Assembly: GCA_951804945.1 (NCBI GenBank)
Contig: OX638149.1
Coordinates: 117,056,001-117,120,000 of the forward strand
Reading direction: 5' to 3'
Origin: Podarcis cretensis
Taxonomy: Eukaryota
DNA length: 64,000 bases
Shown: in pieces, positions 896-52,871 of the stretch
Layout of the letters: each line of letters starts with the position of its first letter
Numbering within the stretch: the first letter of the stretch is position 1
Program-made: the position numbers and the translations under genes
Notes under the pieces: generated by a model
The model's input: only the letters and a program-made list of their open reading frames with translations
Database searches by the model: none
Told to the model about the DNA's origin: nothing

Positions 896-2089
896 GTTAG
901 TTTAACAAAGTCATAAAACACTTTTGTACTCCTTGTTCGACCCGGTGCACTTAGTAGGTTAAAAAACAGCAACAAGCAAACAAACCAGTTACTGAAGCCA
1001 GGCTTCCCATAGCCATGTAGATTCAGTTGTGTGTATACAATAACCTAACTTGTCTTATACTGACCAAGAGGTCCCATAGCCAGGGACTCCATTTTGCAGT
1101 GCTAAACATTAAAATGGTAGGCACAGTTGTAATCATCCTTCCACTTTTAATTCAAAGCGGCATTTTGCTACACTCTCCTAGGTTTCAAATGAGCCTGAAA
1201 AATGAACAAAGCCTTGGATGTCAGCTTCTGACACAACTTTGCCGTGGAAAGAATGGATCTTCACTGAGCAATAATTCTCACTTTACTTTTTGCACTTGGG
1301 TACATGTACTCAAGTAGAAATTCATGTGTGTTTAAATATGTAGGTTGAATTAGGAAGAAGATAATTAGAATTGTGTCCTTTAATTCCAAAATGAATTTTC
1401 AGTAAAGGATCATGTCCTTTTCCTAGCAGACACATGCCATTATTTTTTTTTAAAGGAGAGACATACACTTCATGTGTCTCTCATTTTTCTGGGAATATAT
1501 ATATATAACGAGAAAGGCGTTCCATGACTAGGAAAGTTGCTTGAAAAGGAATGTGGAAGAGAGATTAGAACCTATCCAAAATATTACTTGCAATCCATTC
1601 TGACCTCTCAACTTCATAATACTTCACTGTGTGATGTGAATTTTGCACTTAGTTACACGTACTTGAGTACCAAAAGTAAAGTGAGAATCAGCCCATGCTT
1701 CAGACATTTTATGGCTAAAAGAATTTATGTTACTCCTGCCCTGTCCACCATATTTCATGGAATCCAAGGATCAGCTAAACTAGCTCTGAAACCGAACCAT
1801 TGATAACCAGTACCCCCAGTAAACCAGATATCTAACTGCAGAATGATCTCATCATATATGCAAAAGTCTTGGGCAAATTAAAATCACGTATGCTCCAATA
1901 TCTTGCTGGTATGGGATCCCTAATATGTACACAGGGCTCCTTATAAAAGAGCTTCTATAGGAACAAAGAGCTATGTACTCTTTGTTGAAATGGGGCCAGT
2001 TCATCTGAGAGAACATAGACCTCTTGATCCACAGTCCTGGGTCACCAGCAGTTCTGATCAGTTTGACTGTTTGCATATGGTTACAGATA

Positions 2090-7234: not shown

Positions 7235-8428
7235 GTGGTTATCTGATTTTTAACATTATATGATGTTACTTCATTTCATCCTCATCATCACTGCCTGTAG
7301 CTCCTGTGCTAGTATTTAATTTAGAATTACAGTTTTGAGTTCCATTTCCCCCAACCCTCTACATTTCGGGCTCTATTCATAAAGTAACCACATGCACAGG
7401 TACTCTGTGTAATTTGCTAGTAAAGTAGGAACCATACCTTCCCCTGGCAAGTTACAGAGGTATCGGGTTCATCTCCAAAAGCAAGGACTAGTCAATTTGC
7501 AGTGAAATACTGAAGCAATTTGGAAGTTTCCTATAGGATCAAAGAAAAGTACAAGAAGTTGTTTACAATTATTTCTTCTTTACTGGCTGTTAATTTTTGT
7601 GAAAGCTTTTTTAAAAAAAAACAACATGCTATGTAGTCTAACTTTTAATTTAGGCTATTCTAGTTTACAAAGAGTTTTATGCAGATATTGACTGCCATTA
7701 ACAGAACCATTCTCTGAATGCCCTTTCCCACCCATACCAGTTTTCTTTTAAAATTGGAATTTTGCATCTTTTTTTCATTCTTTTATTGACCACAACAATT
7801 TGTTACGGTTAAGGCAAAGAAACTTCCACATGTCATGTGCCTTGCTTTTCCTTATCCAACACCAGATGATGAAGGTGCCACAAATGTTTTTACCTATAGT
7901 CCCCTCTTGTGTTTAAGCAATGAAGACTAAGAATTGACTTTTGGTTTTCTTCTCATGGCATGGAAATAGCTGCACGATTAGCACACAGAAGAGTAGGAAC
8001 AACAACTTGAACCCCAAACAGTGCCAAATATCCTGCTTTTACAAACTGGTGGATTTCCTGACTTTTCTACACATCACTGAAAAGCATTGCAGCTGCAGCT
8101 GCCTTCTAGGCTATGCAGAAGAAGCCTTGACTAAAACTGAAGATGTCCTTGTAAAAATTACTGTGGGCCAATCCTATTTCCTCTGATGTCAGTGACGCAA
8201 ATCCTGTGGATCTAATTGCACCTTCTATTTAACCTGGCATGAATAGAGCCCTTAAATGTGGAACACGATAGTATAAAAGACTGAAAATTCAATTGTTTTT
8301 TGCACTAACACGCTGAACATTCTTTTTACCATACTAATGGCTTTTATATACATATATATTGCTGAGTATAGATTTTTTTTTTTTTGCTGCAAAACATCTA
8401 ATCTTATCCTAACTTTATTCTTGCCTAG

Positions 8429-8950
8429 CTAAAGAAGCACAAGCCAGAACAGTAACAAAAATTACCCTTGAAACAGATACTAAAAGCATTAAAACAAGCA
8501 AAGAGTCTCAGATTAAAACAGCCTATGAATATAAACAAGAGTCTTCCACGGAAACAACGAGCGTGACAATATCTACAGCTCAAAAAGCACAAGAAGCTGA
8601 GAAACTGAGGATCAGAGACTACTACCCTGATGTTGTGCCGTGCGAAGACATCGCCGAAACTGGTGCCACAGTACCAGTCTTCCTTGAAACTCTGCCCCCA
8701 GAAAGCTTTGTCAAAGAAGGAGATAATGTCTCGCTGTTCTGTGTAATCAAGGGGTTCCCTACACCTTGTGTCATCTGGCTGTATAACCAGCTAATAGTTG
8801 AGGATTCCGCATTGTGCTCTTTGAGGCACGATGGCCCACTGTGCAGTTTAAACTTACTGAAAGTTAAAGAGAATCAGAGGGGTATATACAAGTGCAGAAT
8901 AGTTAATTCTGCGGGACAAGCCGAGTGCAGCACACATCTGAGAGTGACAG
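8429..8950 (+). CDS. TTN: Additional Novex-like TTN exon (linker + one Ig domain), 522 nt, phase 1-1
   Basis: cctaac branch-like site, ttgcctag|; open 174 codons AKEAQARTVTK...PVFLETLPP...FCVIKGFPTPCVIWLYN...GIYKCRIVNSAGQAECSTHLRVT; |gttggc. Confidence 0.85.
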
Positions 8951-9224
8951 GTTGGCAACTGCATGTTCCTTCCATATACTCCTCTTGTGTACCGTCGTTG
9001 AAACCTGTTCAATCCACAGTCCGTGATATAATGAAGCGGTTGTGGATTGTTGAATATTTTCCTCATGGTGTTAAAGGCATGTTAAAGGCATGTTGAATTA
9101 GAAAAAGAAAGAGACGGAGAGGGTGGGGATAGGGAAAGGCTCCTTTAAAATGCTGTGGGGGGAAATCCCCAGTACTTTAGCATCCTCCCACTATTTGTTT
9201 TCAACTTATCAGGCACTTCCTGGC

Positions 9225-9262
9225 ATGTATGTGTATGTATGTATGTATGTATGTATGTATGT
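9225..9262. repeat. (ATGT)n microsatellite
   Basis: Direct reading. Confidence 0.9.
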
Positions 9263-9365
9263 TTATGTGGTTTTTTCCTCCCCCTGTCAATGCAACATTT
9301 TTATTTTCTTCTCTTGCAACATTCAACTCGCTTTCCATTAAATCACACTTTTATTTTTATTACAG

Positions 9366-9422
9366 CCCTGGAAAGAGTTCTGCAGGAGAAGATAGAACAA
9401 CAGATTGAAATGGAAGTGAAAG
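9366..9422 (+). CDS. TTN: TTN exon 47 equivalent, 57 nt
   Basis: ttacag|; ALERVLQEKIEQQIEMEVK; |gtacag; size and peptide match the short exon preceding Novex-3/N2B. Confidence 0.93.
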
Positions 9423-10557
9423 GTACAGTCGCACACAAACGTTTATATGGAAAGGAAGGTTTAGCATTAAAAAAAACCCCAGTAACCCCTTTGAAAAGCT
9501 GATACGTATGACCAAGAAAGCAAAACATATTCTGAAGCATATCTGAATATGCCGCATGTTTTGTTTTAATATGCTCAGGATAACCTGCATTATTACAAAA
9601 AGGATACAAGTTTTAAAGTCCATTTAAAACTTTTCATTTTCACAGATTTGCCCGTCTTTACTTTCACGTCGTGCTATGCAGCTGGTTGCAAAAGCTTTTC
9701 TTTCGTATACCTTCTTGTAATGCATGGGACAATTTTAGACTGTTGCTTCGGATGGTTTCAGAACACATTAGTCCTCTAACATGAATGAGTTGGTCAAAAA
9801 CCATGGGCTGGCATCTGTTTAAGATGCAACACTTTGCAAGATGGGAAAGGGGCCTGTTTCCATTGTTGACCTCCCATTTCATGAACATGATATTAATTCT
9901 CCTTTATGGAAATTCTTACACTGGCTTGCAGATAGCATAGTTGGGCCATGTTGCTTGCTTTCTTTCCTTTTTTCTTTTTTTGCATAACATTGTGAAGTTA
10001 GCAGCTGTATTAGTTCGAATAAACGCCTTCTCATTTTGTTTTAGCAAATTACTTACAGTTGACTTTTTTTTCATATCTTTGAAAAATATCTTTTCTATTG
10101 TTTGACCATTTTAACCCACAATCAAAGGGATCAGAAAGGGCGTTTATTCTACTGTCTGCAAGTCAGGTAAGATTCCCCTCCCCTTCTTTGCAAAGAAGAA
10201 ATGCAAAAATAAAAAAATACAAAAAAATAAAAAGCTTTTCAGGCAGTAAAACATGCACCCACAGGAACATGTCATTTTGAGATTCATTTTGCTTGTTGAT
10301 GAAGAAATTTCCGCAGTTGGAAGAAAGAACCGACAGCGAACGATTTTCGTGTCAGAATCTTTAAAACAGAGCAAGGCGTTGCGTTTATTCGAACAAATAT
10401 GGTGAGTGAATTTTTTTTTTAATGGATTTGTGATGAATCTGTTGCATGCTCATTATTTAATTTCATTTATAGCTATTTCATTTCTTTTCATTTTTTTTTC
10501 CCAACTGTGTGATGGAAAGGACGGAGTACGCTGTAATGTAATGGTATTCTTTTGCAG

Positions 10558-13500
10558 AACTGTTCTTCGGTGAAGAGCCAGAATATGCAGAAAACCCGGC
10601 TGGCAAACAGGCTGCTTCTGCTGATTCCATAGATCTTCCGCAACATGGATCTCTCCCGGATCTGAAGGGCACAAGTGGAATGTCATTTATGCATTCCTGG
10701 CCTGAGAAACAGAAACCTTCTTTCACACAAAAGTTAAAGTATCGGTCTGTTATGGCTGGAGAGCCAGTTGTTTTCCAGTGCAAATTGAGTGCCCTTCCTT
10801 TGCCCCAAATAACATGGTACCATAACAACAGGCAAATCCCCCAAAGTCTGCGAAGGCGAATAAAGAGTGAGAGCTGCATGGATATGCACAGCTCCAGTCT
10901 AGAGGTAAAAGAAGTTCAGGAAAGGGACTCAGGGAGTTACAAGGTTTTTGCTATTAACAGTGAGGGTTCAGCTGAGTCCACTGCTTCATTGTTGGTAGCA
11001 CATGGGGACAAACAAAATGCCAAATACCTAGAGTTTTTGAGACAGTCAGAGAGTACTTGTGAACGTATAGAGCATCTGGCGCAGAAAAGGAGAGGCGATA
11101 GGCTCAAAGTTGATCTGCGGTGTATTGGTTCTCCGTTTGATAAGAAGCAGGAAACCGAGAAAGCGCTGAGAGCTTTTTCTCCTACCAAAGGGATGGTGAG
11201 GACCATAAGCTTTGAAAGCCTCTCGTCCTTAAGAAAAGGATTTGTATACGATAAGGATTGGGTAAGAAACAGGCGTGCAGGTAGGGGGTGTAGTGAGGGA
11301 GAGGCTTTGCTTGACGAGGAAACAAAAGTAAAGTTGCAGCGACTTCGTGAGGCAAAAAAAGCCATGCTGGAAAAGAAAAAAGTGCTTCTATCACAGGGAT
11401 CAACAGAGGAACACCTTCCCTCTGCGAAAATTGTAGGAATTGGAAATAAAAGAGGCCCGTTGGCTCGTTCAATCTGTGCAGCATCTCATGTAGAGACAAA
11501 GGGACTTGCTTTCCAAACTATAGAGCAGATTAATGAAAAGGCCATGTTACCGACAGCGTCAGGCACTAAAGAAGTTACTGTAGGAAGTTCTAGCAGGGAG
11601 CTTGAGAAAACATCAGAAAAATTTCAGGTTAGAATGGAACGGATCCTGGGCCTTCCTGGACCTCCTCAGATTCTCCAGGATTTTCCTGATAAAAGCAATA
11701 GGGGAGGAATGTTCCGGAGACAGGAGGTAGTAGCCTCTAAAGGGAACGTGAAGCCACAAGTTCCAGAAAAAGATCCAAAGGCAATTGGGAACACAGGATG
11801 GATGAACTATACTTATACCCATGGAAAATCAGAAGAAGCAAGAATGGATACTCAAGACTTCAAGGCGACAAAAACCATTAAGAAAAACCCCTCTCCCCTG
11901 GTATATGTACTTTTGACTGATGATGTCAGTGAGAGAGAGAAACATGATGTCAGTGTGAGAGAGAAAGATGATGTCAATGAGAGAGGGAAACCTGATATGA
12001 TGATGTCTGATACAATCACATTGAACATTAATGAACCTGCGCCTGTTTTTGAGATCAGGGAAATGAGCAAAACTGTAGAAATGGCAATGTCAGTAAACAA
12101 ATGCTCCCTTGAAACTGAAGAGTCTGCGTTGGCTGAGGTCACTGAAACAGAAACGGAGATAACAGAACCACCTGACAAATTGGTGAGGCCTCTTCCAAAA
12201 TATCTGGAGCCATGCCCCCCTTTCTTTGTTCATGAAATTGAATCACAAGAAGTAAGCGAAGGAGAGAGCTGTATTTTTAATTGTGATTTCCAAGGCCATC
12301 CACAGGTCACAGTCACTTGGTATAACAATGACAAGCCGCTGTCACGTAACCAAGAATGTAACATCAGAACCACAGAAAATAGTTCCACACTGACATTCTC
12401 CACCATTGTCCGTGATCAGGAAGGCTCCATTACTTGTGTGATATTTAACCAGCATGGGACTGCTACAACTTCAGGAACGCTAAAAGTGAAAGTAAAGGAA
12501 AAGCCTGAATTTGAACCATTCAGTATATGTAAAGTTGAGCTTTCACCAGACTATGCAGAAGAAGAAGAGGAACTCAGTTTGGCATTTGAGTATTCAAAAA
12601 AAGATGAACCTGATTTAAGTATGGATGGCAGAGCCACTCTCCTCCCTCCACAGATTAACCTGCCCAGACCTTGCATTTCTGATCCAGATCTGCTTTCACT
12701 TCCTGTGGAAATAAAAATAATCGCTCCAACCCCAACTCCAGAACAAGATGAAGAATTTAAAGAATTAACTCAGTTTGTTGAGTTTGTGCCTGAAGAACCC
12801 CCTGAAGAACAAACTTCTGCAGGACTAAAGCATAAGTTTAAATTTTCATTTGATGTGGCTCATGAACCCCCCAAAATCTTAAAAGAAATTCAACAACACG
12901 TTAGATGTAGAGAAGGGGATTCGGTGGTACTTGAATGCTTAATATCTGCTGAACCACTGCCAATTGTAACATGGCTGCAGAATGATGGGATTTTAATCCC
13001 CACTGAAAAGTTTTACTTTGAGGAGGGAGATGGCGTTTATAGGTTGCACGTTTGCAAGGTTTCCATATCTGATGCTGGCATGTACAAATGTGTTGCCGAA
13101 AACAAAGCTGGCATAGTCGAAACTGTTTGTTATCTTTCAGTTGATCCCACCATGGAAATATTTTTGGATGAAACTGAGCTCAAAGCTGTCGAAAGCCAAG
13201 TCAGAGGAACTCAGGACCAGATTGCAAAAGAACATTTGGGGAGTTATTTTGAATCCTCAGTAGGACTTACGGAAAGTAGTTTTAGCGATAAAGCATATTC
13301 TGTAAGCCAGCAGTTCCACAGTGTTAGTAAACTGGATTTCGGAGGGGAAGAAACAGGTAGACCAGCCCAGGAAATGGAATCCCAGCTGCCAAATTATCTA
13401 AATGATGTAATGAAGTCTCTACTTGCTGATGAAAGTGAACACCCACATTTCCAGATCTGGGAGCAAAAAGAAGTATATAAAGAGATGGAGTCAAATGCAA

Positions 13501-16500
13501 AAGAAGAACAAAAGGTAGCCAGTATTTCAGAAATTTTAGCAGACACTCCACTTGTTGAGGAATTTAGAGATACAGCTGCTGAGCAAGCCAAAGTAGAAAG
13601 CACATATAAACACGCAGCTATGGAAATATCATCAAGCTGTCAATTTGAAATGGTTGTAGAGAGTCATACGGAAAGAGAGAAGTCAGTTACAGGAGAAGAC
13701 ATTTCTGTAAGTCATGATGTAAAAGATGAAGGGAAAACTGTAAGAGACATATTTGAGAAGATGCAGAAGATTTCTAAAGATCAGGAATTCACACTAGCAT
13801 ATCTGGAACCAGAATCGGAGAGTCTTCAGTATGGACCAACTCAAGGTATATCACACGAGGAAATACCTTCAAGTGAGATAATCACAGACATACCATTTAA
13901 GGAAGTTAAAGAACAAATCTGCACTTTTGAGCAGGAGTTAAGTGCAAAAGAATCTATGGATCATAGGTTTTCCACACTGCTGCAAGAAGACAGTGATATC
14001 CATGAGAAGGATCAATGTTTTACTGATATATTAAGCAAGAATTCTAAGGATCAGTCAGCCATAGAAAAGAGAAGTATGTTACATCTGCAAAATATAAACA
14101 ATGAACTCCAAAGTGCACCTAAGGAAGAACAACTTGACGATGAGGTTGTAAACAAAGAAAATCTGCAGGAGGCAGTAGCCAATGAACACCAAGAACTGTT
14201 CAGAGTAGAAAAAGAGCAAGCATTCAGAAGTTCTATCTCTGACAAAGAGAAAGACACTTTGATCCATGAGGAAAAGTTCACTAGCTTTGGTGAGGGGAAA
14301 GAGAAGGAAATCCATTGTGGTGAAGAATTGGTAGGAAAAGCAGATGTAAGTGTGCCTGAATTTGTATTTGATTTAAAACAAATGCTTACTATTAAAGACA
14401 ACGTAGATAAGAATGCTCAAGAACAAACTGAAACTCAGGAACTCATAGGCCCAAGCTCAATTGCTGGCAAACTTGATATCTCACTTGATGGAATGCCGGT
14501 TCATGCAGATACAGAAACTGCTGATGAACAACAAAACAGACTTAAGTCAGAGGAAGTGTATGCCAAGGAAAAATGTTTGGTTTCTGAAATAATACAAGCT
14601 AATACAAACAAAATCACAGAATCAGCCCAAATCGGCATATCAGCTCTAGAACAAAGATTGGATTCTAGTCAAGGTATTTCTAAAGAGGGTGAACTTGTAA
14701 AGGAAGCAAATTATGCCCAAGAAGATGCATTATGCCTAGAGAAGGAAGAATTTGGTTTACATCCAGCTTCCTTAGGCACAGAAACTGTTGTTGAGGAACA
14801 AGAGGAAATCGTTATCAAAGAACTTTCAGATTTTGAAAGAACAGAGCTAGGCAAGATAATAGAAAGTGCAGAAATAGACACATCAGCTGAGAGTTATAGC
14901 CAGGATATCAACAAAGAGAAGGAACTGGGAGAAGGAATATTTGATTTAAAGCAACTTTCTCTGCATGTAGAAAATGATAGTCAAAACCAGGACGATGTCC
15001 TTGTGAAAGCTCTGCATTCCGGTTCTGAAGAAATGAAACTAGATGTCAACAAAACCCCAGAAATTGTACAAGCTCCCACTTTGTTTGTAGAGCAAGAAAG
15101 AGCTTCTCAACAAGAGCTTTCCCAAGATACTGAACCAGTAAAGACAGAATACAGTTTCAAGGAAGCTATCTTATCCTTTGAAGAAGAATTTCCCTCCAAA
15201 CAATCTAATTATAACATAGAAATTGTTGTTCAGAAGGAAGTTCACATTGAGGAAAAACAGACTCATGAAAAGGATCAAGATTCTGTTTTTACTGTTCCAC
15301 ACACAGAAATTATTGGGGGGAAATATGTTAAAACTGAATATTCAGTTGCTGAAAGCCTGGAAACTGACGTGGCTGAACATGCACACAAAAAATCAGATTT
15401 AGAGGTTTCCAAAATAAATGAAACTATAAAGGAAGAAAGTGGTGCACTGCAACAATCATTACCCCCTAAAAATGGCATTTTTGACTTAAAGCAAGCTTAC
15501 TCAAATATAGAAAAAAATAGCCACCTACCAGAGACAGAAGAAACATACTTAAAAAACCTCTATTCCGCTTCTGAAGGAGTTCAGGCTGATACACAGAGTA
15601 CCATGGAAAATGCACGTCAAATAATGCATTCTTGCCAAAAAGATTCCTTCTCTTTGAAAACCATGATGGAAGAAGAAAATGTTCAGGAATGTACATCCCC
15701 CGAAAACAAAGACATTGATTTAAAATTAGCTTTTCTGAATCTAGAAAATGTTGATCAACAGCAAGAAGAGAAGTTGCCACGGGGGCAAATACCTCTCAAA
15801 TTCCTGTATTCTGCTTCAGAGGAAATGGAAGCCTTTCAAGGGCAGCAGTTGAAATCCACTGAAAGCAATGTCCTCTACAAAAGCAGCAACCACAAAGAAT
15901 GCACCCTGTCCCCAGAGAAAGAACTACAAACACAAGAGCAAATGTTTGATCTGAAAGCACATGCTGCATCTTTATCACAAGGCTTTTCATTGAAGGAGGC
16001 TGAAACATTACCAGAGAAAGAAGTGGGTTCCTTTAATCTGAGGTCGGCTTTTGAGATGGTAGGTACAGAGACAGAGAGTTTCATAAAACAGCTACAGAAG
16101 GCAAGCGTACCAGAGGAAGGAGTTTCTCTAAGTGAGGAACTTCGTCAGAGCTATACGGTGCGGCTGGAGGGAGAGAATTCCCTAGAACAAAAATTACAAG
16201 CGGAAGCAGAGCTGACAGTGACACAAATACTGAAGAAGGCCTTAGAAACTGTTAGCCTTTCTACTGAACAGGAGTCTGCTACAAAACGGCATTGCAATCA
16301 GGAGGGGAAAATTTCTGAGGAGGAAGTGCTTAGGATGCCAGATGAAGCCTTTCTGTGGGGGCAGCCAGAACCCATCCCTCTCAGTCAGTATTTTCAAAAC
16401 CAAGTGGAAGAAACTGGTGTCCTCGAAGCTGATAGTTTCATATCTGATTTGAAGAAAGCTGCACATGGAAAGAAGCCTCAAAGCGTTCATGAAACAGGGG

Positions 16501-18920
16501 GAGAAAAGGCACGTGTTACTGAGAGGACTACTGATATCGAGAAGCCTTTTGATAGCCAAATAATGCCTGACAAACAACCATCATCACACAGCTCAGCCAA
16601 GGAACCCTCGTTGGCCCAGTTCCTTCTTTCCTTAAAAGATGAATCACTTATAAGCCAGGGAGGTGTGACAGGAGAATGTGAAACTACTGAATTCATGAAT
16701 CCTCCTCTAGGAAATCTAACTGAAGGGGCTACCAAAGAAAGTACTCTTCACGCTCAAGAACCTCCTCCTCGTCCTCCTACTCCTCATGAAGGAGCAGATT
16801 TCTCTCTTACAAAATATTTGCTTGCTGCCAGAGAACAGGAGATCCCAGTTGCCAGAGACAGCTCATCCAGGACTCTGACCAGGGAGGGATCTATCACATC
16901 CTTGGAGGTTGAAGATGTTACATTTAGCACCGTATATGATTATTACAAGCAACAGCAAGAACTGACCCGCCCTTTTTCTCCCGAGTCAGAAATGTCTATT
17001 GATATTGACAGCATGAGCGGAGACGAAATGGTAGAGGCTGAGGGATTCTACACACCACCATCTTCAGTGGATAATTTTGAATCTCCCATGTCTTTTGAGT
17101 CTTATCACACACCAATTGGCAGCCCAGAACGATATTCTACGCCTTCAGAGGAACGATACTCTACACCGTCAGAGGAGCGATATTCTACACCGTCAGAGGA
17201 GCGATATTCTACACCATCAGAGGAGCGATATTCTACACCAACTGCAGAGTCAAACAGAGCTTCAATGAGGTCTCCTGCAAATCTAGTGAGGGGAAGTACC
17301 CCACCAGAACGTTACCAAACACCCCGTGGCTCTCGTTTGCAACACAGGAGCTCTTCTCTCGAAGAGCTACGTGCTGAAATGTTCGGTACACCTTGTGAAG
17401 CATTGGAACCAAAGGGAAACGAAATTCCCCCTGCATTTATTAAGCCATTGACTAAAAGAAAAATCTATGAGAACACCACATTGCGTTTTATTGCCGAGGT
17501 CATAGGGATTCCCATACCTGATGTGAAATGGTATAGAAATAAGTCATTGCTTGAGCAAGATGAAAGGGTCAAAATACAAAAAGAAGGTGATGTTTGTATC
17601 TTAGAAATCCGCAACATTCAAAAAACAGACGGAGGGGAATATATGTGCCATGCAATAAATATCATAGGCGAATCCAAGAATATCGCACAAGTACAAGTGT
17701 TACCCCATGATGGAAGAGCTTTGGCTCTTCCTCCTCCAGTAACTCATCAACAGGTTATAGAGTTTGATATAGAACAAGGGTCAGCGTCACGAACACCTTC
17801 GCCTCAGGAAATTCTCCTGGAAGTAGAGCTGGATGAAACTGAGATTAAGGAATGTGAGAAGCAAGTGAAAATAGCCACTATTCCTGAACTCACTTCTGAT
17901 AATCAAAGTATGATTGTGTCTCTTGATGTTCTCCCTTTATCTCTGGTGGAACACACAACGGCTTCTTTTGGGAAAGAGAACAAAGATGTTACAATTGACT
18001 TTGAAGTCACCGAGATGCCTCCACGCTTTACCACCCCTGTCTTTGACATAGAGGTTCCAGAAAAATCTGAGGCATTGTTTCATTGTACAGTCGCAGGCTG
18101 TCCTACCCCAGTAGTGCAGTGGTTTAAGGCAAATCAGTGCATTTCTTCAGACGCTTTGAAGTACACTGTTAGAAGTGAGAATGGAAGTCATAGTCTTAAA
18201 ATTCAGAATGTACAGCATTCTGATAGTGGCATGTATTTGTGTAAGGCTGTTAATGCTGTTGGAGAAGCTATATGCAGGTGCTTGTTAGCTGTAACCGAGG
18301 GCCAAGGGGCTCTTGCAGTGACCAATGATGGAAGTCAGGCAGATTTAAGTTTGGATAGCACTAGTGGTAGGCCTCAAAAGATTGATTTGCTTGTTGATAA
18401 TACTATCCAAAATGGCAACCAGACGGAAATAGAGCTGGAGTTTGAGTTTGAAGGTGACACTGATGATTCTCAGAAAGCTGTTAAATTGGTAGCTGTTACA
18501 GAACAGGAGCAGGAAGAGGAAGGAGAAGCATGTGTAAATATTAACTTTGATGTATTTGCTGAACCATCCAAAGAAGAGCAGATTGAATTTAAAGGTGAGA
18601 GCACAGACAGCTGCAGCTTTGAATTTCAAGTTACAGAAGCACCTCCAAAGTTTATGAAACATATTTCTGATTGTGCTTCTTTCAAGGGTACCTCTGCAAG
18701 TTTCCAGTGTTTAGTAGTTGGTTCTCCAAAACCGGCAATAAGCTGGTTTAAAAATGGGGCATTGATTCATGAAGAGAGATACTGTGTGGAGGAAAGTCAG
18801 GAAGGTTGTCACAGTCTGACTATAAGAAGCTTAGTCCAAACTGATGAAGGCGAGTATAAGTGTGTAGCAACCAACAAAGCAGGGACTGCCTATAGCAGTG
18901 CTTTGTTAACAATCTGCTGA
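10558..18920 (+). CDS. TTN: TTN Novex-3 alternative terminal exon (exon 48), about 2787 aa, six Ig domains, TGA stop
   Basis: tttgcag|AA CTG TTC is in frame with ORF 10680-18920; KPSFTQKLKY, ERYSTP repeats, PPAFIKPLTKRKIYENTTL; ends ALLTIC-stop. Confidence 0.96.
11919..11990 (+). repeat. 24-bp coding tandem repeat (DDVSEREK-like) x3 in Novex-3
   Basis: gatgatgtcagtgagagagagaaa / catgatgtcagtgtgagagagaaa / gatgatgtcaatgagagagggaaa. Confidence 0.9.
17127..17240 (+). repeat. 24-bp coding tandem repeat (ERYSTPSE) x4.75 in Novex-3
   Basis: gaRcgataYtctacRccNtcagag repeated. Confidence 0.95.
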
Positions 18921-22098: not shown

Positions 22099-23075
22099 AG
22101 TTCAAAATACAGTATTCGACTTTGGTTTCGTATTCTTCATTGAGCATACATTGATGAATTAATTATCAACCTTTAAACAATGGTGGTATGTATGTGAAGG
22201 TCATAACCTTTATGCCCATCCTTCTAGACATATGAAACTAGAAACACATCATTTTTTCTAGAGTTGAACAGAGGGTGGGATGTTGGGAAAGTTCTCATTG
22301 TAACTGTCAAACAAAGAACAGTTAACTTACTCTGGCATTTAAATTTAAAAACATGTACCAGTCATTTGCACACATGCTCAGTTAATCATTAGTAGACAGC
22401 TGCAGTGTTCTAACAGAGTACTTTAAATGTTTGTAGGGGAAATGTAATGTTGCATACCTGCAGTTTAGAGCCGCAAAGGTATAGAGGCCTCCTTAGAACC
22501 TTGAAGGTACACAAAACTCCCATGGTTCTCTGTGACAGAGACAAAGAAAATTCTGTGCTGCCAGGGATTCTCCCCCCCCCCCATAGTTTTTAGGTAGAGC
22601 TATATCGTTTGTTTGTTTGTTTGATTGATTGATTGATTGATTTAAATTTGTATACCGCCCTATGCCTGCAGGTCTCAGGGCAGTTACAACATAATATCAC
22701 AATAATATAAAAACACAAAATACATAATAAAAAAAGAAACAGAAAATATCTTTATTGTACCACTTGACCTGGAAGTAATAGCTGTATAGTCCTCCTCATA
22801 TCATAGTTTAACCATTTGTGAATCTTAATTGCCATTTTAGAAAAAGGGAGGAATTTATAGTATTTAGTGCGGCAAAACTGAGTGGTTTTGTAAAAGTCCC
22901 GAAAACATGTCCGCCTCTATACCATCAACTTTATCTGTGGTTATCATTGCAGAATCTTACATAGGGCAAAGACGAAAGCTTTGCTTCGAAACACTGAGCT
23001 GCTTTGTTTTGTAGTTTTGTAGAATTTGTAGTATTAAGTGTGGCAAAAGTGAGTGCATGGATTAGGAAGTCAATA

Positions 23076-23362
23076 CAATGGTGCCTCGCAAGACGAAATG
23101 AATCCATTCCGCGAGTCTCTTCGTCTTGCGGTTTTTTTGTCTTGCAAAGCACGGCTATTAGCGGCTTAGCGGCTATTAACGGCTTAGCAGCTTAGCGGCT
23201 TTAAGAAAAAGGAAACAAACTCGCAAGAACTCGCAAGACGTTTCATCTTGCGAAGCAAGCCCATAGGGAAATTCGTCTTGCGAAGCACCTCAAAAAACGG
23301 AAAACTCTTTCGTCTAGTGAGTTTTTTGTCTTGCGAGGCATTCGTCTTGCGGGGCACCACTG
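23076..23362. mobile_element. Non-autonomous Tc1/mariner-type MITE, copy 1
   Basis: TIRs CAATGGTGCCTCGCAAGACGAA ... TTCGTCTTGCGGGGCACCACTG, TA target duplication, internal TTAGCGGC repeats; near-identical copy at 52482. Confidence 0.88.
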
Positions 23363-23767
23363 TATCTAACTGATCCATGCCCCCATTGGAGGACTTACAG
23401 AAGCTCATGCACATAAGAAAGGATGGCAACCAATTGGTGGGGAAAGCCAAATTGTTTTCTGACTGCTTGTCTGCCTGGCACAGTGTATGTGGACCATTTG
23501 TGGACCACAGAGCAGCCTTAGGTCTTCTGATCAAGAGCTGAGAACCACGTGGCTTCTGAGTATTAAGAAGATGAATGTTTTCCTTCCAGAGGAAGGCTAT
23601 ACTGCCTAGGATACCTTATATGATCAAATACCTCTGGGTAGAGAAAGAAACACTGGCACTATCAATACTGAACCATATGGTTGATGGTCCGACTTGGCAT
23701 AAAATAGTTGTCTGTGTCTTTGACTTGGAACTAATTTTTGCTGGCTGAGCTCTAGAACATCCTGTCT

Positions 23768-23856: not shown

Positions 23857-25035
23857 TCATTTCCAACACCATAATTCTATGTTTCTACTGAATGGCATGA
23901 AGTGGAGTGCATTAGTTGTGCTTGACTGTTTAATTCAGTTGAAATGAATGGGATTTATGGTTCATTGATTTCAGTGGGACTTAAGCATCTCCCCCCCCCC
24001 CCCCGGATTGGTGCTGTATAATCAATAGCACCATTTCAGTGAATAGCTTTTATTTCACTTACCATCCTACACCTCAGACCACATTCCTTTTTCTGATATA
24101 AAACAGCCCCATAAAGCAAATCCAATAAGAATAATTGCTGAATCTACCTCCAGGTGTTAAGTGTACTTTAAGTCACACAAAAAATACGTAGAAGATTATA
24201 TACCAGTGTAAAAAATTATTACAAGTTTAAATATTTATTATTGTGTGATATGTTACTGAATCCCTATCCCAATTAATATTCTCTTTATGACTTTATGACT
24301 TGGAGTGAGATTTCCTTTTCCATTAATAGAAGGGTTCCTTTCTTCTGCAGAAGTTTCTCTGTTCCAATAGAGGATCCCGCTGACAGAAAATGTGAGAGCA
24401 AATTTTTGTGGATTCCTCCTTCCCCTTGCATTCTCATGCCACAGGAGGGTTCCCCAAATTTGCCAGAGCAAATTTTCAGGGGGATGCAGGGTGAAGCAGC
24501 AAAATTTTCCTTTTCTTCCTTCTGTCAGCAGGAACACCCCATAATGAGCATTCAGCTCATGGATCTGCAGTACCAATTTTTTTTTTAAAGGGGGTATTTA
24601 AATCATCAAACATTTATTGCAGACTCTTGTATCTCCCAGATCAACTTTCCTCAGCCTGGTATCCTCCAGATGTCTGAGGCTCTCAGCTCCCATCATCCCT
24701 GACCGACAGCCATACTGGTTGGAGCAGTTGGAAATTGTAGTCCAAAACATCTGTAGAATAGCAGGAGAGGGAAGACTGCCCTTGATGGGGAACTTGTGGC
24801 CCTCCAGACTTTGCTAGATTTCAATTCCCATCAGTCCCAGCCACAATGGCTAATGTTCTAGAATGATGGGAGCTGTGATTTTGCTTTTTTAGTACTAATG
24901 GAAAAGTGAACATCTGAGTCTGTCTATACATATTAAACACCAACCCATATATCTGAGATGTATTATGCCTTCAGTTTACGTATATGCAGATATTCCCCAA
25001 TATTCATGCACTGATTAAATGGGAAATTGTCAGTA

Positions 25036-25274
25036 CAGTGGTACCTTGGTACTTGGTTCCCAAACAAATCGACTCCCAAACGCCGCAAACCTGAAAAGTG
25101 TACTGGGTTGCGAATGTTTTTCGGAAGCCTAATGTCCGATGTGACAGACAAGTGGCTTCCGATTGGCTCTTGTGATTGCAAGAGCCAATCAGACGCCGTG
25201 CCTTGGAAATTGAACGTTTCGGAAGTTGAATATCCTTCTGGAATGGATTACGTTCAACTTCTGAGGTACCACTG
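25036..25274. mobile_element. Tc1/mariner-type MITE, related family
   Basis: TA|CAGTGGTACCT ... AGGTACCACTG|TA. Confidence 0.8.
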
Positions 25275-25469
25275 TATAAACTGAATCCTAAAATAATGTC
25301 CACCCTTTGATTCAAGGTATATTTTAAAATATATGAATGTTTTAATCATCTTGCAGCATTACAAAGTGTTGTCTTAACATGATAATTGATTGATAGTATC
25401 TGGTAGATACAAGATGAATTTTTCAAGAAAGCATTTTAGTAAAATGTAAATAATTTTTTCCCCATACAG

Positions 25470-52462: not shown

Positions 52463-52481
52463 GTGTGTTGCTGTCTTAATA

Positions 52482-52783
52482 CAGTGGTGCCTCGCAAGAC
52501 GAAAAGAATCCGTTCCGCAAGTCTCTTCGTCTTGCGGTTTTTTCGTCTTGCGAAGCAACCCTATTAGCAGCTTAGCGGATTAGCGCTATTAGCGGCTTAG
52601 CGGCGCTTAGCGGCTTAGAAAAAGGGGGGGAGTGAAAAAACTCGCAAGACTTGCAAGACGAAAACGTCTTGTGAAGCAAGCCCATAGGGAAATTCGTCTT
52701 GTGAAGCGCCTCGAAAAGCGGAAAACCCTTTCGTCTAGCGGGTTTTTCGTCTTGCGAGGCATTCGTCTTGCGGGGCACCACTG
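52482..52783. mobile_element. Non-autonomous Tc1/mariner-type MITE, copy 2
   Basis: TA|CAGTGGTGCCTCGCAAGACGAA ... TTCGTCTTGCGGGGCACCACTG|TA. Confidence 0.9.
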
Positions 52784-52871
52784 TAGTTGGTTAACCATTC
52801 TTGTACTAATTGCCATCTTCTGATGTGCTTAGATTGACTGTGGGTATTGACTATGATTATTTCTGCTGCAG

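What the first reader, a model, noticed from the sequence alone, without database searches (positions are those of the whole stretch)
10007..10407. Putative competing-RNA-structure switch masking an intronic poly(A) signal at the exon 47 / Novex-3 / N2B branch point
Seen: GTTCGAATAAACGC (10013-10026) contains AATAAA (10018-10023) and is the exact reverse complement of GCGTTTATTCGAAC (10381-10394). The helix extends to 20 positions (10007-10026 with 10381-10400; one mismatch, one G-U). The same upstream sequence also pairs perfectly over 11 nt with GGCGTTTATTC (10139-10149), so the two pairings are mutually exclusive. Each partner lies just upstream of a near-consensus 5' splice site that belongs to no known exon (CAG|GTAAGA at 10166/7; ATG|GTGAGT at 10401/2). 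The AATAAA follows a strong pyrimidine tract with AGs (9951-10004) and precedes U-rich sequence. The interior shows no TIR/TSD signature. Known: docking/selector pairing controls Dscam exon choice, and U1 binding or RNA structure can suppress intronic polyadenylation. Inference: a one-docker, two-selector switch choosing between premature termination, microexon use, Novex-3 and full-length titin. I know of no such description for TTN.
Basis: partly seen in the sequence, partly recalled or inferred. Interest (0 to 1): 0.8.

Follow-up and report, generated by a model that had tools for sequence, protein, structure and literature searches.

The report
Inverted repeat touching titin exon 48'
A real 19-20-base inverted repeat lies in the titin intron just upstream of the Novex-3 exon, and its right arm appears to be the end of an already published small cassette exon (48'), so it may dampen use of that exon, but nothing shows it works as a poly(A)-masking switch.

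Summary
10008-10026 pairs with 10381-10399 (18/19, plus a G-U at 10007/10400), and 10017-10027 also pairs with 10139-10149. Repeats of this quality are rare in simulated sequence (0.05 per 64 kb), but the real window holds four such loci and the other three look like transposon relics.

The interpretation needs correcting. The "orphan" donor at 10401/2 most likely belongs to exon 48', an 85/100-nt cassette exon between TTN exons 47 and 48 that is conserved from fish to human (PMC5852582). Here, 10317-10401 is the only 85-nt AG..GT interval in the intron. It is open in frame, makes a TGA at the junction with Novex-3, and has CpG o/e 2.1. So the right arm is the end of that exon.

AATAAA is at background frequency (40 in the window, 3 in this intron). 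Folding is not robust: the far pairing wins in a 500-nt context, and the near pairing wins in the whole intron.

My best reading is an intronic inverted copy of the exon 48' end that could mask that exon's donor. A neutral relic is about equally likely. A poly(A) switch is unsupported. Interest is modest.

The parts
9366..9422 (+). Titin exon 47 (57 nt, phase 1 in and out; peptide ALERVLQEKIEQQIEMEVK). Its donor at 9422/9423 starts the intron that holds the finding.
   Evidence: Sequence and splice sites. The 57-nt size equals exon 47 of human and lizard in PMC5852582 Table 1.
10008..10026 (+). Left arm (L) of the inverted repeat. It holds AATAAA at 10018-10023. Degenerate complementarity continues to about 10057.
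10130..10149 (+). Near partner (M) of the left arm: 11 nt perfect (10139-10149), or 17/18 with a 2-nt bulge against 10017-10034. Duplex energy -22.6 kcal/mol.
   Evidence: (I11). It is the dominant partner in whole-intron folding.
10045..10166 (+). Pseudo-exon-like interval with a good acceptor tract, ending in the donor-like CAG|GTAAGA at 10166/7. It has a stop in phase. There is no evidence of use.
10317..10401 (+). Probable exon 48' (85 nt; an alternative acceptor at 10304/10305 gives 97 nt in the same frame). Donor ATG|GTGAGT at 10401/2. Read in phase from exon 47 it encodes VGRKNRQRTIFVSESLKQSKALRLFEQI and forms a TGA with the first base of the Novex-3 exon.
   Evidence: It is the only 85- or 100-nt AG..GT interval with a usable donor in the intron. 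CpG o/e is 2.12 against 0.19-0.35 in other introns. It matches the 85/100-bp frameshifting exon 48' of PMC5852582. No direct sequence comparison with that paper was possible.
10381..10400 (+). Right arm (R) of the inverted repeat, equal to the last 20 nt but one of exon 48'. It ends one base before the donor. Degenerate complementarity begins at about 10350.
   Evidence: L:R duplex energy is -27.9 kcal/mol for the core and -35.9 kcal/mol extended.
10558..18920 (+). Novex-3-type terminal exon (acceptor at 10557/10558; open to the stop at 18918-18920).
   Evidence: ORF. Six I-set stretches. Closest proteins are from snakes (72%) and turtles (68%).

Best explanation
The right arm is not anonymous intron. 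It is the 3' end of the small cassette exon 48' (10317-10401), which lies between titin exons 47 and 48 and whose inclusion ends the reading frame at the junction with the Novex-3 exon. The left arm is an inverted copy of that exon end, 290 nt upstream of the exon's acceptor.

In the pre-mRNA the two can form a 19-20-bp helix (about -28 kcal/mol, or -36 with the bulged extension). This helix buries the exon end up to position -2 of its donor and loops out its acceptor. The expected effect is less exon 48' inclusion, and therefore more in-frame 47->48 (Novex-3) or 47->49 splicing. A nearer partner (10130-10149) competes for the same left arm and would free the exon.

Shown:
- the sequences and their non-randomness;
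- the exon assignment, by size, frame, donor strength and CpG retention.

Inferred:
- that the helix forms in vivo;
- that it changes splicing;
- that it is under selection.

The AATAAA inside the left arm is most likely incidental.
For: - The helix and its competitor are real.
- A helix of this quality is rare in simulated sequence (0.05 per window).
- Against the specific 42-nt exon end, the inverted match scores 40, while the null maximum over 400 simulated introns is 32.
- The arms extend degenerately to about 50 nt.
- The exon 48' assignment rests on four points: it is the unique 85-nt AG..GT interval, it is open in phase, a stop forms at the junction, and CpG o/e is 2.12. It matches PMC5852582.
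- The left arm and M keep all their CpGs, in a window with CpG o/e 0.34.
- The intron is 1135 nt here and 1021-1105 nt in eight vertebrates. A recent 392-nt insertion is therefore unlikely.
- Helices that overlap weak or cryptic splice sites and loop out exons are a documented way of lowering exon use (PMC8052449). Competing pairings control ATE1 (PMC7797038).
- RBM20 does not regulate this region (PMC5852582), so some other control is needed.
Against: - There is no cross-species sequence, covariation, junction reads or structure probing.
- In partition-function folding of the whole intron, the near pairing L:M has probability about 1 and L:R about 0. Forcing L:R costs 20 kcal/mol. L:R wins only in the 9950-10450 context.
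- The 500-nt region is no more stable than shuffles.
- The exon 48' assignment is inferred from size and sequence features, not from an alignment with the published exon.
- The 30-aa peptide search found nothing, though its power was low.
- In this window the other three repeats of equal quality are transposon-like, so the base rate for function is low.
Confidence: 0.38

Rival explanations
1. Neutral relic. A short piece of the exon 48' end was copied in inverted orientation (and partly in direct orientation, M) into the upstream intron, for example by template switching. It has no measurable effect on processing, and the donor-like and AATAAA motifs are background.
For: - Real genomic sequence in this window has far more such repeats than simulation: 4 loci against 0.05 expected.
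- The fold is not robust and is not more stable than shuffles.
- AATAAA and donor-like motifs are at background frequency.
- No functional evidence of any kind was obtained.
Against: - The outer 19 nt show 1 change, while the inner 31 nt of the same arms are much more decayed.
- Both CpGs of the left arm are intact.
- A perfect 14-bp core next to a donor would be expected to have some effect if it forms.
Confidence: 0.36
2. The left arm is a docker whose pairing hides an intronic poly(A) signal. Choice between the two selectors decides between premature termination, microexon use, Novex-3 and full-length titin.
For: - AATAAA lies inside the left arm, with U-rich sequence downstream.
- The two pairings are mutually exclusive.
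- RNA structure has been proposed to help suppress intronic polyadenylation in general (PMC8052449).
Against: - AATAAA occurs 40 times on this strand of the window, and two more copies (10208, 10226) lie unpaired in the same intron.
- There are no 3'-end data.
- A terminal exon ending here would be only a few tens of nt long.
- One of the 'orphan' donors is explained by exon 48'.
Confidence: 0.05
3. A MITE-like transposon of 392 nt (10008-10399), with TA-flanked terminal inverted repeats and a subterminal copy of the arm motif.
For: - Its size, the TA at both ends, the degenerate arms of about 50 nt and the internal extra copy all resemble true MITEs in the same window. Those are 23073-23365, 52480-52785, 25034-25276 and 1272-1690.
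Against: - There is no second copy in 64 kb, whereas the true MITE family has two to three.
- It has no CAGT-type termini.
- TA is its own complement, so it cannot count as a target-site duplication.
- The right arm lies in a CpG-rich 85-nt interval that fits an exon conserved since fish.
- With the element, the intron has the ancestral length; without it, the intron would be about 740 nt.
Confidence: 0.06
4. Pure coincidence in AT-rich intron sequence.
For: - The 14-nt core alone occurs in 28% of simulated windows.
- The scan covers very many windows, and the features were chosen after seeing them.
Against: - A helix of at least 18 nt with at most 1 mismatch occurs 0.05 times per window.
- The extension and the third copy are each individually unlikely.
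Confidence: 0.08

Closest known systems
TTN exon 48' (Chen et al. 2018, Genes 9:86, PMC5852582)
   Same: It lies between exon 47 and the Novex-3 exon. It is 85 nt, with a second acceptor a few codons upstream. Inclusion truncates the Novex-3 reading frame. The intron length is about 1.1 kb.
   Different: The long form here would be 97 nt, not 100. The identity is inferred from size, frame, donor strength and CpG retention, not from an alignment. The paper describes no RNA structure.
Competing long-range RNA structures in vertebrate splicing (ATE1 R1/R4 versus R3, PMC7797038) and docking/selector pairing in Dscam1 (PMC12962786)
   Same: One segment has two mutually exclusive complementary partners, each placed beside an alternative splice site.
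   Different: Those systems are defined by deep conservation, compensatory changes and mutational tests, none of which is available here. Here one partner lies inside the exon, not in the intron next to it. There are no mutually exclusive exons.
Pairs of conserved complementary regions that loop out exons or cover weak or cryptic splice sites (PCCR catalogue, PMC8052449)
   Same: The helix is intronic-exonic, of similar length and energy, lies near a splice site, encloses a cassette exon's acceptor and abuts its donor.
   Different: Conservation is untested. That catalogue covers human genes, its authors state a substantial false-positive rate, and TTN is not mentioned in its text.
Tc1/mariner-type MITEs of this same window (23073-23365, 52480-52785)
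   Same: Short elements with terminal inverted repeats, TA at the ends, and extra internal copies of the arm motif that give several alternative pairings.
   Different: Those are multi-copy and have TACAGT ends. The finding's repeat is single-copy in the window, and one arm lies in a probable ancient exon.

Membership tests
Titin exon 47 / Novex-3 / N2B region | 57-nt exon 47, followed after about 1.0-1.1 kb by a giant terminal exon with six Ig domains and a stop | tested here: met
   Exon 9366-9422 is 57 nt and the intron is 1135 nt. The ORF runs to 18920 with 6 I-set stretches. Sizes agree with PMC5852582 Table 1, and six Ig domains agree with PMC13649281. The closest proteins are reptile titin fragments.
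TTN exon 48' | Cassette exon of 85 or 100 bp between exons 47 and 48 whose inclusion shifts the Novex-3 frame | tested here: met
   10317-10401 is 85 nt and is the only such interval in the intron. It gives a stop at the junction. The long form here is 97 nt rather than 100.
TTN exon 48' | High sequence similarity from fish to human | not testable with these tools
The only indirect sign is CpG o/e 2.12. The peptide search was blank, with low power.
TTN exon 48' | Seen in heart RNA | not tested
Docking/selector or competing-helix splicing switch | One segment with two or more mutually exclusive complementary partners | tested here: met
   L:R is 18/19 and L:M is 17/18. They overlap on 10017-10026. 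Energies are -27.9 and -22.6 kcal/mol.
Docking/selector or competing-helix splicing switch | Conservation with compensatory substitutions | not testable with these tools
   No related sequences were available.
Docking/selector or competing-helix splicing switch | Pairing predicted robustly and better than background | tested here: inconclusive
   L:R probability is 0.97 in 9950-10450 but about 0 in the whole intron, where L:M is about 1. The z-score is 0.03.
Structure-masked intronic poly(A) site | A poly(A) signal that stands out from background and is used when unmasked | tested here: not met
   The hexamer occurs 40 times in the window and 3 times in this intron. Its use could not be tested.
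MITE (Tc1/mariner-like) | Terminal inverted repeats with a TA target-site duplication | tested here: inconclusive
   A 19-nt repeat, degenerate to about 50 nt, begins and ends with TA. But TA is self-complementary, so it is simply part of the repeat.
MITE (Tc1/mariner-like) | Multiple copies in the genome | tested here: not met
   There is no second copy in the 64-kb window, while the true MITE family has 2-3 copies there. A genome-wide count was not possible.

The most novel reading that the evidence does not exclude
The left arm, the near partner and the exon 48' end form an ancient, vertebrate-wide competing-helix switch. The switch sets how much titin pre-mRNA is terminated by exon 48' versus spliced to Novex-3 or on to full-length titin. 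Its spacing requirements would explain why this intron has kept a length of 1.0-1.1 kb from fish to human.
Probability: 0.12. Interest if true: 0.7.

Novelty: new member of a known kind. Interest (0 to 1): 0.33.

Why it matters
How cells set the amount of the short Novex-3 titin is an open question. PMC13649281 calls for work on its regulation, and PMC5852582 shows that RBM20 does not control this region. Suppose the pairing between the upstream intron and the exon 48' end is conserved. It would then give a concrete element to test in a minigene for the choice between a truncating cassette exon, Novex-3 and full-length titin, and a target for antisense oligonucleotides. If it is confined to this lizard lineage, it is an ordinary intronic inverted repeat. 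The practical correction for the scan is that the "orphan" donor at 10401 is best explained by a published exon.

Tried and rejected
**Routes that failed**
- Reads: the look-up of sequencing runs found holders in eight organisms, plus probable RNA runs. So there are no junctions, 3' ends, variants or depth.
I also withheld the right arm (10381-10400), because it is their reverse complement. Folding, alignment and counting after one search were done only in the closed script machine, from window.fa.
Both metagenome scans, one with P0002 and one with the window's own protein, were empty.
- P0004 and P0006 (52-54% identity, source organism unknown) were not pursued. No contig that I took for human was fetched.
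- Rfam found no match in 8000-12000.
- The peptide of exon 48' without the right arm (30 aa) had 0 hits against 1.84 billion representatives. At that length a blank says nothing.
- Literature searches for a described structure, poison exon or complementary regions in this TTN intron found none.
- The earlier-findings word search was empty.

**Readings considered and rejected**
- The ATG at the end of exon 48' as a start codon for a Novex-3-only protein: the frame closes after 24 codons in the Novex-3 exon (read).
- A 231-nt insertion with a 10-nt target duplication splitting the right arm: the gapped alignment shows the left arm matches the exon end along its whole length.

**Spliced model**
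- The exon 47 -> 48' -> 48 model was only translated locally.

Full report
**Observation.**
- The 14-nt exact core is 10013-10026 / 10381-10394.
- It extends to 18/19 over 10008-10026 / 10381-10399, with a G-U at 10007/10400.
- AATAAA is at 10018-10023.
- A second, mutually exclusive partner lies at 10139-10149. It is 11 nt perfect, or 17/18 over 10017-10034 / 10130-10149 with one 2-nt bulge.
- Donor-like 9-mers are at 10166/7 and 10401/2, each one mismatch from MAG|GTRAGT.

**Chance.** The 14-nt core alone is unremarkable: 28% of Markov-simulated 64-kb windows have such a seed within 600 nt.
- A helix of at least 18 nt with at most 1 mismatch is rare in simulation, at a mean of 0.05 per window.
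- The real window has four such loci. The other three are transposon-like.
  - Two are copies of a roughly 300-nt MITE with TACAGT ends and several internal copies of the arm motif (23073-23365 and 52480-52785).
  - One is an element with 47-nt arms (1272-1690).
- So the repeat is non-random, but in this genome non-random inverted repeats are usually not regulatory.
- The accessory features are at background. AATAAA occurs 40 times on the + strand and three times in this intron. There are 26 donor-like sites on the + strand against 15 on the - strand.
- The 9950-10450 region folds no better than shuffles (z = 0.03).
- Rfam has nothing here.

**Context.** The window is the titin Novex region.
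- An Ig exon ends at 8950.
- A 57-nt exon lies at 9366-9422.
- A giant exon runs from the acceptor at 10557/8 to a stop at 18920. It has six I-set stretches, as described for exon 48 of Nx3 (PMC13649281).
- Its start is 72% identical to snake proteins and 68% to turtle proteins.
- Exon 47 of 57 nt and an intron of about 1.1 kb match Table 1 of PMC5852582.
- The finding therefore sits in the 1135-nt intron between exon 47 and the Novex-3 exon. Its right arm is 158 nt upstream of the Novex-3 acceptor.

[quoted passage not shown] In the window:
- 10317-10401 is the only AG..GT interval of 85 or 100 nt with a usable donor.
- A second AG 12 nt upstream gives a 97-nt form in the same frame.
- Read in phase from exon 47 it is open, and it forms a TGA with the first base of the Novex-3 exon.
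- It holds 7 CpGs in 85 nt (o/e 2.12), against 0.19-0.35 in other introns of the window.

The right arm of the repeat is then the last 20 nt of that exon.

**What this does to the explanations.**
- A 392-nt MITE is now unlikely.
  - Its right end would be an exon conserved since fish.
  - The intron has the ancestral length with the element in it: 1135 nt here, 1021-1105 nt in eight vertebrates.
  - There is no second copy in the window.
- The left arm looks like an inverted copy of the exon end.
  - Against the last 42 nt of the exon, the inverted match scores 40, while the null maximum is 32.
  - With small gaps it runs over 10008-10057 / 10350-10399. The inner part is significant on its own, at p about 0.002-0.02.
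  - The outer 19 nt are nearly perfect and keep both CpGs, whereas the inner part is decayed. That pattern fits either constraint on the core or a short, young copy. I cannot tell which.

**Likely mechanism.** If the helix forms (-27.9 kcal/mol for the core, -35.9 extended), it covers the exon end up to position -2 of the donor and loops out the acceptor.
- From what is known of such pairings, this should lower exon 48' inclusion and favour in-frame Novex-3 or full-length splicing. Known pairings obstruct weak or cryptic splice sites, and looped-out exons show lower inclusion (PMC8052449).
- The near partner M would compete, as in ATE1 (PMC7797038).
- Folding does not settle this. L:R has probability 0.97 in a 500-nt context. 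In the whole intron, L:M has probability about 1 and L:R about 0, and forcing L:R costs 20 kcal/mol.
- M is also transcribed first.
- I put 0.38 on an effect on exon 48' and 0.36 on a neutral relic. These are nearly tied.
It rests on a hexamer that also occurs twice more, unpaired, in the same intron.

**What could not be done.**
The tool states that this filter also trips by chance and is no evidence of anything, so I draw nothing from it.
Later folds, alignments and counts ran only in the closed script machine.
No orthologous intron was seen, and conservation and covariation remain untested.
- The 30-aa peptide search was blank, which at that length is uninformative.
- The spliced reading 47 -> 48' -> 48 was only translated locally.

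**Verdict.** The locus annotation is improved, with an orphan donor assigned to a published exon. The poly(A)-switch idea is unsupported. A known kind of mechanism, a long-range helix at a cassette exon's donor with a competitor, remains a fair but unproven candidate. Interest is modest until cross-species or RNA data are added.

Noticed in passing
window 23073-23365 and 52480-52785; related element 25034-25276: Two copies of a roughly 300-nt MITE with TA|CAGTGGTGCC ends and several internal copies of a TCGTCTTGCGA motif in both orientations. A related TACAGTGGTACC-ended element lies about 230 nt upstream of the N2B-like exon.
   Followed up: partly
window 1272-1690; 24681-24878: Two further inverted-repeat elements in titin introns: one with 47-nt arms at 77%, and one with 62-nt arms at 71% and a 74-nt spacer.
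   Followed up: no
window 17130-17239 and 11920-11996: 24-nt tandem repeats inside the Novex-3 exon. The first gives 4.6 copies of an ERYSTPSE peptide unit, and the second has 3.2 copies.
   Followed up: no
window 10317-10401: The probable exon 48' has CpG o/e 2.12 (7 CpG in 85 nt). Its 28-residue tail is basic and ends in a stop made across the splice junction, which suggests a conserved alternative C-terminus rather than a mere frameshift.
   Followed up: partly
window 10045-10166: A pseudo-exon-like interval of 122 nt, with a good pyrimidine tract and the donor CAG|GTAAGA, and a stop in phase. The left arm overlaps its acceptor tract, and M lies 17 nt before its donor.
   Followed up: no
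window 10384-10390 / 10404-10410: A small local hairpin across the exon 48' donor, predicted with probability about 0.95 in the whole-intron ensemble.
   Followed up: no
window 9423-10557: This intron is 1135 nt. The literature gives 1021-1105 nt for the same intron in eight vertebrates, while neighbouring introns vary several-fold. This length constancy is unexplained.
   Followed up: no
window 9232-9262 and 9069-9094: A (TGTA)n microsatellite and an 11-nt tandem duplication in the intron between the Ig exon and exon 47.
   Followed up: no
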